Below are positions 42,076 to 50,048 of a DNA stretch of 64,000 nucleotides, one piece after another; the first letter of the stretch is position 1; the number at the start of each line of letters is the position of its first letter. The position numbers and the translations under genes are program-made. The stretch spans positions 682,001 to 746,000 of the forward strand of contig OZ218958.1 in assembly GCA_965112735.1 (NCBI GenBank). Direction: 5' to 3'. The stretch is from Phaeosaccion multiseriatum. Lineage: Eukaryota > Protista > Ochrophyta, other classes. Under the pieces are notes generated by a model. That model had not been told where the DNA came from. It did no database searches and worked only from the letters and a program-made list of their open reading frames with translations.

Positions 42076-46619
<4,544 letters not shown>

Positions 46620-47016: not shown

Positions 47017-50000
47017 ATGGCGTCTTCGAAGAAGGCGGCCGGGGCGACGGCGGGGGAAGAGCCACTCAGTGAGGGCGAGGTGTTCGACTTGGTGTTGGAC
47101 TACTTGAACACGAAGGGCTATGAAGAGACGGAGAGCATGCTGCGGCGAGAGCACCGCGCCACTCCGCCCCGTCAAGGCAACCAGGCATCAGGTCAGTGCC
47201 GTAAAGACCCGTCCCATCTTCACTCTGTCTCCGGGGCCCGGCTGGGGTGCATGGTTGTCCAGAGACGTGTGTGATAGCCCGCACACACCTGCTCCGTGTG
47301 TATAGAATGTTTGGCGATTGAAAGAACCACAGGAAGTTTCCATAGAGGAGACTATGGTCATAAAGCTCGCTTACACGCGCTGGCTTGAATGCGATACTGC
47401 ATCGTGAGGTGGTGTGTATGCCCTGGGGTTGCTGCTGCCCCTCCACTCACTGCTTCATCGTCCGTCTCCTCTCACGTGCCCCAACACCACTCCTCCCCTT
47501 CCCCACTTGCTACCTTGGACCTCCCCCTCCTCTGCACGCACGCAGGCTCTCAACTCGAGAACATGCTCGAGAAGTCGCATGTGGCCGCCATCTTCGGAGG
47601 AGGGGATAGGAAGCGCGTCAAGAGGAGCCACCTCGATGCCAAGCTTGCGGACGACACGTGAGTGGTGGATTGACTTGCCGTGATGACTTGCGTACACGCA
47701 GTGCCAACCAATGCAGAGGACAGAAGACTGGCTGTCGCACGGATGGGCACAATGTATCTGCCCACGGGGCGGAGCAGGAGGTTCTCATACAGATGAGACA
47801 GGATGTTCAGGATGTTCATTAGAAACACCCCTGCCTGCGCTCACTCGCGCACGCCCTCGACCGCTTGGTTGTGAGGCTTGCTTCTGTGAGGGGGAGGCGC
47901 TGAAACGCCCCGACTTGACCAGTCGAGTCTTGATGTATATTGCAGGAGCAGAAAGGGACTAGGTCGACACTCGGCCCTCGTATGTTTATATTTGGAGAGA
48001 GAGAGAGAGAGAGAGAGACGGCCAGGCCCTCGATACCCTCTTTTCTCCCCCCTCCCCCCAACTTCTGCCTACCTGCCTGCCTGCCTGCCTGCCTGCCTCC
48101 GACTGACTCTCCCCTGCCCCCCTCCCCTCTGGCCTCCCCTCTTCTCTCGCTGCCCTCCACCCGTCCCTGACCCCATCCCAACCCCACACCCACCCCTAGC
48201 AGCAAGGACCGATCCGCAGTAGAGGCGGCCAAATCCCTTGCCAACCAGCCGCAGTCCATGGCCACTCAAATCGCGTCCTACAACCCCTGCAAGAAGGACC
48301 CGTACGGAGCCTCAAGCATGCCCATCTACCAAGTGTCCACCTTTGCACAACCCTCCGCCACGACTTTCGGGGAGTTTGACTACTCTCGAAGCGGAAACCC
48401 TACCCGAGAGGCCATTGAAAAGCAAGTGGCCGAGCTGGAGGGAGGGCACCGCGCCTTTGCCTTCACCAGCGGTATGGCTGCCCTTAGTGCGGTGACCCGT
48501 CTGGTGCGCTCCGGTCAGGAGATTGTCCTGAATGACGACTCTTACGGAGGCACTTACCGCCTCCTCTCCAAGGTCGCCGCCAGGAACAACATACAGGTGT
48601 GTGTTTGTGTGCGTGGGCGTGTGCGTGGGCGTGTGCGTGGGTGCGTTGTGTGTGTGTGTGTGGGTTTGTGCGTATGCGTGTGTGTGTGTAGTGTGTGGGT
48701 GTGGGAGAGGGTAGGTGTAGGTGAGGTGCCCAGAGAAGTTGGGGGTCTCTGAAGTGTTCCAACGTCGTCCTGACGTGGCTTTGGCGTGCCACCTCCCTCC
48801 CTGTCCTCCTCCTTCTCCGTCTCCCCCCTTTTCTCCTCCCCCCCCTCCTTTTCCTCCTTCTCAGATTCGCTACGTGGATATGACTGGCGATGCCGGCCCC
48901 GCTAACCTTCAGGCCGTGATGAGCGAGAACACCGCCCTGGTCATGCTGGAGAGCCCCACCAACCCCATGGGGAGGGTCATCAACATCGCAGAGGTGTGCA
49001 GGGTGGCCCACAGCAAGGGCGCCATCGTGGAGGTGGACAGGTAAGGGGAAGGGGATGAGAGAGAGAGAGAGAGAGAGGAGGGTACCCCCGAGTATCGTTG
49101 CGGCACAGGTTTAGAAAGAGGGAGAATTTTTTCGCTCTTCCTGCTTTTGTGGCAGAACCACCCTCTTTTTTGTTTCCCCCCTCCCCCGTCCCCCGTCCCT
49201 CACTGAATAAGTGCCCCCGCCCGCCCACACCTCGCCCATCCACTGCCATCTCATCCCCTCCCCACAGCACCATGATGTCCCCCGTGCTCCAGAAGCCCAT
49301 CGACCTCGGGGCGGACCTCATTGTTCACAGCGCCACCAAATTCATCAGCGGACACGCCGACTGCATGGCGGGTATTGTCGTGTGCAAGACGCACGAGCTG
49401 AGCCAGGAAGTGTACTTTTATCAAAACGCAGAGGGCACCGGGTTGAGTCCTTTTGACAGCTGGCTGCTCCTGCGTGGCATAAAGACGATGCATCTTCGCG
49501 TGGAGAAGCAGCAGGCGAATGCCATGCTTGTGGCACGCTTCCTCGCGGCCCACCCAAGCGTGACGGAGGTGATGTACACGGGGCTCGAAAGCTGCCCGGG
49601 GCACGACATGCACAAGAAGCAGGCCAAGGGATCGGGCAGCGTCCTGTGCTTCAGAACGGGCAACCTTGCCTTCTCGCAGCACGTGGTGACGGTGACCAAG
49701 CTGTTTAAGATTACCGTGAGCTTTGGAAGTGTCAACAGCCTCATCTCTCTACCGGGCGCCATGTCGCACGCCTCCATCCCCGCGGAGGTACGCAAGGCAA
49801 GGGCGTTCCCTGAGGATCTGATTCGCCTCAGCATTGGCATTGAGAGTTCGGATGACCTCATCGCTGATTTGGGTTCGGCGTTCCAGAGCTTTGAGAGTCC
49901 TCCTCCTTCGGCGGCGGACACGGCCGCTGCAGGCAAGGGTGGCGGCAAGGGAAAGGGAAAGGCCAAGGCAGCAGCCGCAGCGGCCGCAGCAGGGGCGGCG

Positions 50001-50048
50001 GAGGCGAGGAAGGAGGCAGCGGGAGCGAGTGTTGATAAACCGGAGTAG
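47017..50048 (+). CDS. metC: Cystathionine beta-lyase (Cys/Met metabolism PLP family) with an N-terminal LisH-like motif (exons 47017-47191, 47546-47657, 48200-48596, 48865-49040, 49268-50048)
   Basis: DPYGASSMPIYQVSTF, FDYSRSGNPTR, FTSGMAA, YGGTYRL, LESPTNP, HSATKF (PLP Lys), GLSPFDSWLLLRGIKT, VSFGSVNSLISLP and IRLSIGIE. Upstream exons join in frame (phases 1 and 2). Beta-lyase rather than gamma-lyase is inferred from resemblance to plant CBL/yeast Str3 motifs. Confidence 0.88.

What the first reader, a model, noticed from the sequence alone, without database searches (positions are those of the whole stretch)
47017..48260. LisH-like dimerisation motif plus NLS-like patch spliced onto cystathionine beta-lyase
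Seen: two upstream exons splice in frame into the PLP enzyme. They encode EVFDLVLDYLNTKGYEETESMLRRE and GDRKRVKRSHLD, and there is no signal/plastid presequence. Established: the first peptide fits the LisH consensus (LIxxYLxxxGYxETAxxLxxE) of LIS1, TOPLESS and GID/CTLH E3 ligase subunits; plant CBL instead carries a plastid transit peptide, and GID/CTLH targets metabolic enzymes. Inference: this methionine-pathway enzyme may be wired to a regulatory complex, or be nuclear (local homocysteine/SAM supply), or form higher-order assemblies. I do not know a description of this architecture, but I cannot check novelty.
Basis: partly seen in the sequence, partly recalled or inferred. Interest (0 to 1): 0.75.

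Follow-up and report, generated by a model that had tools for sequence, protein, structure and literature searches.

The report
LisH module on stramenopile cystathionine beta-lyase
This alga's methionine-pathway enzyme cystathionine beta-lyase really does carry an N-terminal LisH pairing motif, a second conserved helix and a basic patch, and the same add-on is found in brown algae, golden algae and oomycetes such as Phytophthora, yet no paper I could search describes it.

Summary
Exon 1 (47017-47191) encodes a LisH motif that passes Pfam's threshold. Exon 2 (47546-47657) encodes a helix motif (SQLENMLEKSHV) and the basic patch RKRVKRSHLDA. Both join in frame, through GT-AG introns, to a plant-type cystathionine beta-lyase (CBL) in exons 3-5, giving 546 aa.

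No RNA data exist for this organism; the four runs that hold the locus are DNA. The gene model rests on relatives:
- More than 60 orthologous CBLs carry the same three-part module. Named ones come from brown algae, Tribonema, Chrysoparadoxa, Fibrocapsa, Ochromonas and many oomycetes.
- Some are transcript-derived: MMETSP transcripts and uninterrupted mRNA-size contigs.
- Pylaiella has intron 1 in the same Gly codon and the same phase.

A profile search of 1.84 billion proteins found motifs 2 and 3 only on CBLs. Plant CBLs and a chrysophyte "MSEF" paralog lack the module.

Function is inferred. Most likely the LisH pairs N-termini of the tetrameric enzyme or docks it to a partner, and the basic patch may act as a nuclear import signal.

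No searchable paper describes the architecture, and this scan had not noted it before. Verdict: a real, ancient, undescribed variant of a known enzyme; moderate interest.

The parts
47017..47191 (+). Exon 1: start codon, about 20 polar residues, the LisH motif and a short linker ending ..GNQASG. The last base is the first base of a split Gly codon (phase 1).
   Evidence: Sequence; ORF list; Pfam LisH; aligns with the N-termini of orthologs.
47077..47151 (+). LisH motif, residues E21-E45 (EVFDLVLDYLNTKGYEETESMLRRE).
   Evidence: PF08513 scores 25.3 bits against a cut-off of 21.6. A family profile hits the TAF5, SMU1 and LIS1 LisH motifs in PDB. AlphaFold2 on the orthologous module gives a two-helix hairpin with pLDDT 89-95.
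47192..47545 (+). Intron 1 (GT..AG, 354 nt), phase 1.
   Evidence: Sequence. Pylaiella littoralis has an intron at the same codon and phase..NQQSG|SRLE.
47546..47657 (+). Exon 2: motif 2 helix, a Gly-rich turn, the basic patch and the start of the acidic linker.
   Evidence: Sequence; aligns with orthologs at 60% identity to Ectocarpus.
47548..47583 (+). Motif 2, SQLENMLEKSHV (family consensus SRLEDLLEKSYVT). L, E, E, S and V are at least 90% conserved.
   Evidence: Alignments A1-A3. Predicted as a helix with pLDDT about 56-69. A profile search found it only on CBLs.
47608..47640 (+). Basic patch plus LD core, RKRVKRSHLDA. It fits the classical monopartite NLS pattern K-[KR]-x-[KR] and the family core R-[TSA]-[NH]-L-D-[AG].
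   Evidence: 27 of 30 orthologs have at least 3 K/R in the 10 residues before LD; L and D are at least 90% conserved.
47658..48199 (+). Intron 2 (GTGAGT..AG, 542 nt), phase 2. It contains (GA)n and (CTGC)n simple repeats.
   Evidence: Sequence. Pylaiella has a phase-2 intron with a GTGAGT donor in the same variable linker.
48200..48596 (+). Exon 3: 19-codon variable linker, then the start of the CBL core (Met at 48258, ..SYNPCKKDPYGASSMPIYQ..).
   Evidence: PF01053 E 1.4e-30; TIGR01329 135 bits.
48865..49040 (+). Exon 4: middle part of the CBL core.
   Evidence: PF01053 E 5e-10; TIGR01329 34.5 bits.
49268..50048 (+). Exon 5: C-terminal two thirds of the CBL core, with the PLP-binding Lys codon at 49338-49340 in the SATKF motif. 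It ends in a Lys/Gly/Ala-rich tail of about 50 aa and a TAG stop at 50046-48.
   Evidence: PF01053 E 6e-81. Best solved relative is Arabidopsis CBL 1IBJ at E 3e-82, against 6e-54 for the next. TIGR01329 310 bits.

Best explanation
One five-exon gene (47017-50048, + strand) encodes a 546-aa cystathionine beta-lyase. It has no organelle presequence.

The plant-type PLP catalytic core is preceded by a conserved N-terminal module of about 95 residues and a variable acidic linker. The module has three parts:
1. A LisH two-helix hairpin.
2. After a variable linker, an amphipathic helix motif (consensus SRLEDLLEKSYVT).
3. A basic patch ending in R-[TSA]-[NH]-L-D.

Shown here:
- the exon structure is in frame;
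- the LisH call;
- the CBL identity of the core;
- conservation of the whole architecture in ochrophyte algae and oomycetes;
- restriction of motifs 2 and 3 to CBLs.

Inferred:
- The enzyme still makes homocysteine from cystathionine. The PLP lysine and the family-invariant residues are present.
- The LisH acts as in LIS1, TBL1, SMU1 and TAF5, pairing with a second LisH in a four-helix bundle. On a tetrameric enzyme this would either tie pairs of N-termini together within a tetramer, bridge tetramers, or dock the enzyme onto another LisH protein.
- Motif 2 and the basic patch are short docking elements on a flexible tether. The basic patch is a plausible importin-alpha (NLS) site.

The module therefore most likely controls where the enzyme sits, or in what assembly, rather than its chemistry.
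For: Gene model:
- Canonical GT-AG introns and a continuous frame.
- Exons 1, 2 and 3 align colinearly with the N-termini of 33 orthologs. The conserved string NQxSGSRLE spans the exon 1/2 junction.
- Pylaiella genomic DNA has intron 1 in the same Gly codon and phase, and a phase-2 intron 2 in the same linker.
- LisH and CBL lie on one uninterrupted ORF in MMETSP transcripts of Fibrocapsa and Ochromonas. The same holds for 1.7-4.3 kb contigs of three runs of a brown-alga-like species.

LisH:
- Pfam scores 25.3 bits, above the 21.6 cut-off.
- 18 of 36 family members match at E<=0.01.
- The family profile's best PDB hits are the LisH motifs of TAF5 (E 3e-4), SMU1 and LIS1.
- AlphaFold2 gives a hairpin with pLDDT 89-95 and 71-86 in the full-length ortholog.
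- The top Foldseek rows are SMU1 (0.8 A over 31 residues), LIS1 and TBL1.
- Language-model neighbours are LisH clusters.

CBL core:
- PF01053.
- 1IBJ at E 3e-82.
- The TIGR01329 equivalog scores 513 bits, above the 487.5 cut-off, for Ectocarpus P0004.

Constraint on the module:
- L31, V32, Y35, L36, L48, L73, E74, L77, E78, S80, V82, L98 and D99 are at least 90% conserved across 45 ochrophyte and oomycete proteins.

Specificity of the module:
- The profile search of 1.84e9 representatives gave 60 hits. Every hit that covers motifs 2 and 3 and is long enough continues into a CBL core.
- Both word searches returned CBLs only.
- On a quick tree, all 65 module-bearing CBLs fall in one clade with SH-aLRT 100, apart from the plant CBLs.
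Against: - There is no transcript evidence from this organism itself.
- LisH dimerisation, any partner and any nuclear import are untested.
- The Foldseek matches to LisH structures are not statistically significant (E>1), because the element is only about 31 residues long.
- Motif 2 is modelled with only moderate confidence.
- The K/R run is weak in several oomycetes, for example PKPAHRTNLD in Saprolegnia and PRGIRSDLN in Albugo. This argues that the patch is not simply an NLS.
- A module-less 'MSEF...' CBL paralog exists in the chrysophyte Chlorochromonas danica, so the module is not needed for catalysis.
Confidence: 0.62

Rival explanations
1. Nuclear or partner-bound moonlighting enzyme. 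The module's main job is to take CBL into the nucleus through the basic patch, or onto a LisH-containing complex such as TFIID/SAGA through the TAF5-like LisH. This would couple homocysteine/methionine/SAM supply to chromatin or transcription.
For: - A K-[KR]-x-[KR] pattern is present in the window and in about 20 of 30 orthologs, and 27 of 30 have at least 3 K/R.
- The nearest solved LisH motifs by sequence are those of TAF5.
- There is no organelle presequence.
- A module-less paralog coexists in a chrysophyte, which hints at a specialised role.
Against: - No localisation data were found in any searchable paper.
- The TAF5 similarity is only 24 bits on a 27-residue motif.
- No TAF5 appeared in the 1.84e9-protein profile search.
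- The basic run is degenerate in several oomycetes.
Confidence: 0.2
2. Turnover control. The LisH module sets the half-life of the enzyme, or is a handle for regulated degradation. This includes the reader's GID/CTLH idea.
For: - LisH has been reported to affect protein half-life as well as dimerisation and localisation (Gerlitz et al. 2005, seen only as a cited reference in PMC9564828).
- GID/CTLH does target oligomeric metabolic enzymes in yeast (PMC8189437, title and abstract).
Against: - No CTLH or CRA domain follows the LisH.
- From my own knowledge, GID substrates are recognised through N-terminal degrons, not through a LisH of their own.
- Nothing in the sequence links this protein to that ligase.
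Confidence: 0.1
3. Two genes merged by the reader: a small stand-alone LisH protein (exons 1-2, stopping at TGA 47659-61) followed by an ordinary CBL that starts at ATG 48258.
For: - An in-frame stop follows directly if intron 2 is retained.
- A Met at 48258 is conserved in brown algae and Tribonema.
- There is no RNA from this organism.
Against: - More than 60 orthologs carry the module and the CBL in one protein, including transcript-derived ones.
- Intron phases are conserved with Pylaiella, where the same read-through TGA exists.
- The Met is absent at that site in chrysophyte-like and oomycete orthologs.
- No complete stand-alone protein was identified among the hits fetched; the short hits read were exon-1 ORFs running into intron or truncated CBLs.
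Confidence: 0.03
4. Chance LisH resemblance: the extension is just a disordered spacer with no function.
For: - The LisH score is modest (25 bits) and only half of the family members reach E<=0.01 individually.
- Most of the linker is predicted to be disordered.
Against: - Thirteen positions are at least 90% conserved across the ochrophyte-oomycete split.
- The hairpin is predicted with confidence.
- The profile hits bona fide LisH structures.
Confidence: 0.03

Closest known systems
Arabidopsis thaliana cystathionine beta-lyase (PDB 1IBJ; plant-type CBL, TIGR01329)
   Same: The catalytic core matches. Exon 5 hits 1IBJ at E 3e-82, far ahead of gamma-synthases and gamma-lyases. It is about 62-65% identical to plant CBLs. 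The SATKF PLP-lysine motif and the YxR-SGNPTR phosphate loop are present.
   Different: Plant CBLs carry a chloroplast transit peptide. This protein instead carries a LisH + motif 2 + basic patch module with no presequence. Plant CBLs form a separate clade without the module.
LisH motifs of TAF5 (6HQA_B, 6T9I_D), SMU1 (6Q8J), LIS1 (1UUJ) and TBL1 (2XTC)
   Same: A 25-30-residue two-helix motif with the same hydrophobic pattern. TAF5's ..IVLEYLNKKGYHKTESMLR.. is the closest solved sequence. SMU1's LisH superposes at 0.8 A over 31 residues on the model.
   Different: Those LisH motifs are followed by NTD2/WD40, CTLH/WD40, a coiled coil/WD40 or F-box-like/WD40 parts in scaffold proteins. Here the LisH sits on a PLP enzyme of amino-acid synthesis and is followed by motifs not found elsewhere.
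GID/CTLH E3 ligase subunits (LisH-CTLH-CRA modules)
   Same: They share a LisH motif, and GID/CTLH deals with oligomeric metabolic enzymes (PMC8189437, PMC13061415, abstracts).
   Different: There is no CTLH or CRA domain. Nothing indicates that this protein is a subunit or a substrate of that ligase.
Module-less 'MSEF...' CBLs (e.g. Chlorochromonas danica EP01039_P001892, P0112)
   Same: They belong to the same CBL clade as the module-bearing proteins.
   Different: They have only 15-43 residues before the core and no LisH, motif 2 or basic patch. This shows that catalysis does not need the module.

Membership tests
LisH motif (Pfam PF08513) | Sequence match to the LisH HMM at or above the curated gathering score | tested here: met
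   Exon 1 scores 25.3 bits against a 21.6 cut-off, E 1.4e-5, residues 25-45. 18 of 36 family members match at E<=0.01.
LisH motif (Pfam PF08513) | Two short helices forming a hairpin | tested here: met
   AlphaFold2 on the orthologous module gives H3-17 and H20-33 with pLDDT 89-95. The same helices appear in full-length P0004. The top Foldseek rows are LisH proteins, but at E>1.
LisH motif (Pfam PF08513) | Homodimerisation through a four-helix bundle | not testable with these tools
   Only monomer prediction is available. This needs AlphaFold-Multimer or SEC-MALS.
Cystathionine beta-lyase, eukaryotic/plant type (TIGR01329, EC 4.4.1.13) | Cys/Met-metabolism PLP fold over the whole core | tested here: met
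   PF01053 positions 6-118, 124-173 and 175-380 of 381 are covered by exons 3, 4 and 5.
Cystathionine beta-lyase, eukaryotic/plant type (TIGR01329, EC 4.4.1.13) | Whole-protein score above the equivalog cut-off (487.5 bits) | tested here: inconclusive
The window was scanned exon by exon only: 135.3 + 34.5 + 309.7 bits. The Ectocarpus ortholog P0004 scores 513 bits and passes.
Cystathionine beta-lyase, eukaryotic/plant type (TIGR01329, EC 4.4.1.13) | PLP-binding lysine and closest solved relative being a CBL | tested here: met
   SATKF has its Lys codon at 49338-49340. 1IBJ is the best PDB hit by 28 orders of magnitude in E-value.
Cystathionine beta-lyase, eukaryotic/plant type (TIGR01329, EC 4.4.1.13) | Beta-cleavage of cystathionine to homocysteine | not testable with these tools
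   This needs an enzyme assay or complementation of a metC or str3 mutant.
GID/CTLH-type LisH-CTLH-CRA proteins | CTLH and CRA domains directly after the LisH | tested here: not met
   No CTLH or CRA family hit at E<=1 on exons 1-2, nor at E<=0.01 on 36 module sequences.
Classical monopartite nuclear localisation signal | K-[KR]-x-[KR] basic cluster in an exposed, disordered segment | tested here: met
   The window has KRVK within RKRVKR. About 20 of 30 orthologs fit the pattern and 27 of 30 have at least 3 K/R. The segment has pLDDT below 50 in the model. Actual import was not tested.
Plastid-targeted CBL (plant transit peptide, or stramenopile signal plus transit peptide) | N-terminal hydrophobic signal peptide or Ser/Thr-rich transit peptide | tested here: not met
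   By inspection, the first 20 residues are polar or acidic and are followed at once by the LisH. No predictor was available.

The most novel reading that the evidence does not exclude
The LisH module recruits a methionine-pathway enzyme into a LisH-based assembly. This could be a nuclear complex, through the TAF5-like LisH and the NLS-like patch, or LisH-bridged enzyme polymers. Homocysteine/methionine/SAM supply would then be spatially coupled to transcription or chromatin, or switched by polymerisation, in all module-bearing stramenopiles, including oomycete pathogens and brown algae.
Probability: 0.12. Interest if true: 0.8.

Novelty: new variant of a known kind. Interest (0 to 1): 0.5.

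Why it matters
CBL is a core enzyme of methionine synthesis. Methionine biosynthesis is discussed as a fungicide target; in the searches run here that discussion concerns fungi (titles).

A conserved LisH-containing module, kept since the common ancestor of ochrophyte algae and oomycetes and found on no other protein family, implies a lineage-specific layer of control over this enzyme. That control could act on assembly, location or partners. It is not annotated in most database entries: only 2 of the listed hits carry a precomputed LisH call. It is described in no paper I could search.

It is a cheap experimental target. Delete or mutate the module in Phytophthora, Ectocarpus or Nannochloropsis-like systems, then look at oligomer state, localisation and methionine prototrophy.

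The finding also warns annotators. Several public models lack exon 1 or exons 1-2, namely those of Ascophyllum, Phaeothamnion and a JGI model.

Tried and rejected
- RNA evidence.
- Word search with the Ectocarpus N-terminus. It returned 8 hits, all CBLs, so it was too narrow. It was repeated with a chrysophyte-like N-terminus and returned 45 hits, all CBLs.
- Cluster look-ups to name the environmental orthologs. They gave almost no organism names. The presence of the module in diatoms, pelagophytes, eustigmatophytes, labyrinthulids or non-stramenopiles therefore stays open. The T. pseudonana 'CBL-like' model in PMC4523565 is 456 aa with no extension noted.
- Weak non-CBL profile hits. P0185, P0191 and P0203 are LisH plus a LESML-like string in a low-complexity protein. 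P0183 is a fungal Zn2Cys6 protein with two LisH motifs. P0187 is a TPR protein and P0178 a repeat protein. I judged these to be LisH-only or spurious matches.
- Motif 2 as a leucine-rich nuclear export signal. I checked it by eye against the NES spacing classes; it fits none, so I rejected this.
- Foldseek of the module against PDB. Nothing reached E<=0.001.
- The careful maximum-likelihood tree did not finish in the time allowed. The tree cited is the quick one.
Full report
**What is in the window**

- An ATG at 47017 opens exon 1 (47017-47191, donor GT at 47192).
- Exon 2 runs from 47546 to 47657. Its acceptor AG is at 47544-45 and its donor GTGAGT is at 47658. An in-frame TGA follows if this intron is retained.
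- Exon 3 starts at 48200 and reaches the Met at 48258 in frame, since 175 + 112 + 58 nt make 115 codons.
- Exons 3 (48200-48596), 4 (48865-49040) and 5 (49268-50048, TAG stop) complete a 546-codon frame.

Every search on the window was done exon by exon, by reference. The Ectocarpus ortholog P0004 served as the full-length proxy.

**Domain calls**

- Exon 1 matches Pfam LisH (PF08513) at 25.3 bits, above the gathering score of 21.6, over residues 25-45.
- Exon 2 alone matches no family.
- Exons 3-5 cover Cys_Met_Meta_PP (PF01053) from position 6 to 380 of 381.
- Exon 5's best solved relative is Arabidopsis cystathionine beta-lyase 1IBJ (E 3e-82). The next hit, a gamma-lyase, is at 6e-54.
- The NCBIfam equivalog for eukaryotic CBL (TIGR01329) is the top family for exons 3 and 5. 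It scores 135.3, 34.5 and 309.7 bits on exons 3, 4 and 5.
- The full-length Ectocarpus ortholog scores 513 bits against a cut-off of 487.5.
- The PLP lysine lies in SATKF (codon 49338-40).

**Transcript evidence**

None exists for this organism. The single run search returned four runs of one sample. All hold the introns, with no joints, so they are DNA.

**Evidence from relatives**

A search with the exon-5 ORF found CBLs of 495-548 aa. This is about 100-130 residues longer than a bare core. Named sources are:
- brown algae (Ectocarpus, Pylaiella, Undaria);
- Tribonema;
- Chrysoparadoxa;
- an MMETSP transcript of Fibrocapsa;
- an MMETSP transcript of Ochromonas;
- many oomycetes (Phytophthora, Pythium, Albugo, Saprolegnia, Aphanomyces, Lagenidium and others).

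Their N-termini share the following order of elements:
1. LisH (..VFDLVxDYLxTKGFxEAExxLRxE).
2. A variable linker that often contains NQ.
3. Motif 2 (SRLEDLLEKSYVT..SG).
4. A basic patch ending R-[TSA]-[NH]-L-D-[AG].
5. A variable acidic linker.
6. The CBL core.

The window's exons 1, 2 and 3 align colinearly with these (A1). The conserved string NQxSGSRLE spans the exon 1/2 junction.

In Pylaiella genomic DNA the gene spans 12.6 kb. Intron 1 splits the same Gly codon in the same phase, and intron 2 is a phase-2 GTGAGT intron in the same linker.

A brown-alga-like ortholog (P0005) is one uninterrupted ORF on 1.7-4.3 kb contigs of three independent runs. This is spliced mRNA carrying LisH and CBL together.

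The two-gene alternative is therefore very unlikely.

**Is the LisH real?**

- 18 of 36 module sequences match Pfam LisH at E<=0.01.
- A profile of the module hits, in PDB, the LisH motifs of TAF5 (E 3e-4 and 5e-4), then SMU1 and LIS1.
- AlphaFold2 predicts two helices with pLDDT 89-95 for the isolated module and 71-86 in the full-length protein.
- The best-ranked Foldseek rows are SMU1 (0.8 A over 31 residues), LIS1 and TBL1, although none is significant for so short an element.
- Language-model neighbours are LisH clusters.

**The rest of the module**

Motif 2 is the best-conserved part of the extension; L, E, E, S and V are at least 90% conserved. It is predicted as a helix of moderate confidence.

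In the basic patch, 27 of 30 orthologs have at least 3 K/R, and about 20 fit K-[KR]-x-[KR]. The invariant part, however, is the following L-D, and several oomycetes have a weak K/R run. The patch is therefore NLS-like but probably more than an NLS.

All linkers are predicted to be disordered.

**Specificity and distribution**

A profile of the trimmed module (A2) was scored against 1.84 billion representatives. It gave only 60 hits at E<=1e-3.
- Every hit that covers motifs 2 and 3 and is long enough continues into a CBL core.
- The short hits are exon-1 ORFs or truncated contigs.
- A few weak non-CBL hits share only the LisH.
- Two word searches with N-termini returned CBLs only.

On a quick maximum-likelihood tree of 98 CBL cores, all 65 module-bearing proteins fall in one clade with SH-aLRT 100, apart from the plant CBLs. 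I left out rows with cores shorter than 340 aa.

That clade also holds a group of complete, module-less 'MSEF...' CBLs. One of them is from the chrysophyte Chlorochromonas danica. It also holds obviously truncated models (Ascophyllum). So the module is ancient, and it has been lost or is absent in a paralog in some lineages.

**How it probably works**

Shown:
- a single protein with a flexible N-terminal tether that carries three conserved elements;
- an intact CBL core.

Inferred from established knowledge of LisH (LIS1, TBL1, SMU1, TAF5):
- The hairpin pairs with another LisH.
- Because Cys/Met PLP enzymes are tetramers, four LisH motifs per particle could pair within a tetramer, bridge tetramers, or bind a foreign LisH protein.
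- The basic patch may bind importin.
- The existence of a module-less paralog suggests the module adds regulation or location, not catalysis.

**Novelty**

- Full-text searches for LisH with cystathionine (beta-lyase), and for LisH domain with Phytophthora, found nothing relevant.
- Searches for CBL with oomycete or Phytophthora also found nothing relevant.
- A diatom methionine-pathway survey does not mention such an extension (PMC4523565).
- The proteins sit in databases as plain 'cystathionine beta-lyase'. Only 2 of the listed entries carry a precomputed LisH call.
It had noted another methyl-cycle fusion in the same genome.

The joined window protein was not searched or folded.

Noticed in passing
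window 42076-46619 (- strand): The upstream neighbour is transcribed divergently. It is a long ORF with AMP-binding/acyl-activating-like peptides, and its coding region is interrupted by (GT)n and (GA)n microsatellites around 45300-45570. About 400 bp separate its start from ATG 47017, so the two genes may share a bidirectional promoter.
   Followed up: no
window 49880-50045: The CBL ends in a low-complexity tail of about 50 residues, rich in Ala, Gly and Lys (..GKGGGKGKGKAKAAAA..), beyond the Pfam domain. Orthologs have Ala-rich tails of variable length, but not the Lys-Gly repeats.
   Followed up: no
window 47995-48100 and 48597-48690: The introns carry simple repeats: (GA)n and (CTGC)n in intron 2, and a GTGTGCGTGGGC-type tandem repeat plus (GT)n in intron 3. 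Logan contigs break at exactly these places.
   Followed up: partly
P0112 (Chlorochromonas danica), P0057, P0059, P0060, P0077, P0110, P0111, P0118: This is a group of complete CBLs of about 400-430 aa that start MSEF.. and lack the whole module. They nest in the same clade as the module-bearing CBLs. A module-less paralog therefore coexists with the LisH form, at least in chrysophytes.
   Followed up: partly
P0015 (MMETSP transcript, 465 aa) versus P0010: P0015 is 83% identical to P0010 in the core, but it has a different N-terminus rich in Ser, Arg and Gly (MIIRFVLSSATGCTSRPLL..) in place of the module. This could be an organelle-targeted paralog or isoform.
   Followed up: partly
P0001 (Phaeothamnion), P0006 (Ascophyllum), P0007 (JGI), P0011/P0013 (Tribonema): These public gene models look incomplete. 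P0006 starts in the linker. P0007 has motifs 2 and 3 but a different first exon. P0001 lacks the N-terminus. Both Tribonema models lack about 30 core residues before LGADIVVHS. Exon 1 lies behind a long intron (4.3 kb in Pylaiella) and is easily missed.
   Followed up: no
oomycete orthologs (P0019, P0031, P0036, P0040, P0041, P0046): The oomycete proteins carry an extra conserved insert, EKIFVPRHE, between motif 2 and the basic patch. It is absent from the algal proteins.
   Followed up: no
P0098, P0107, P0108, P0119 (chrysophyte-like, 540-545 aa): Some models extend 35-50 residues upstream of the LisH with a hydrophobic stretch. This could be a read-through of the 5' UTR or a real signal anchor. 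The 504-aa forms of the same proteins start just before the LisH.
   Followed up: no
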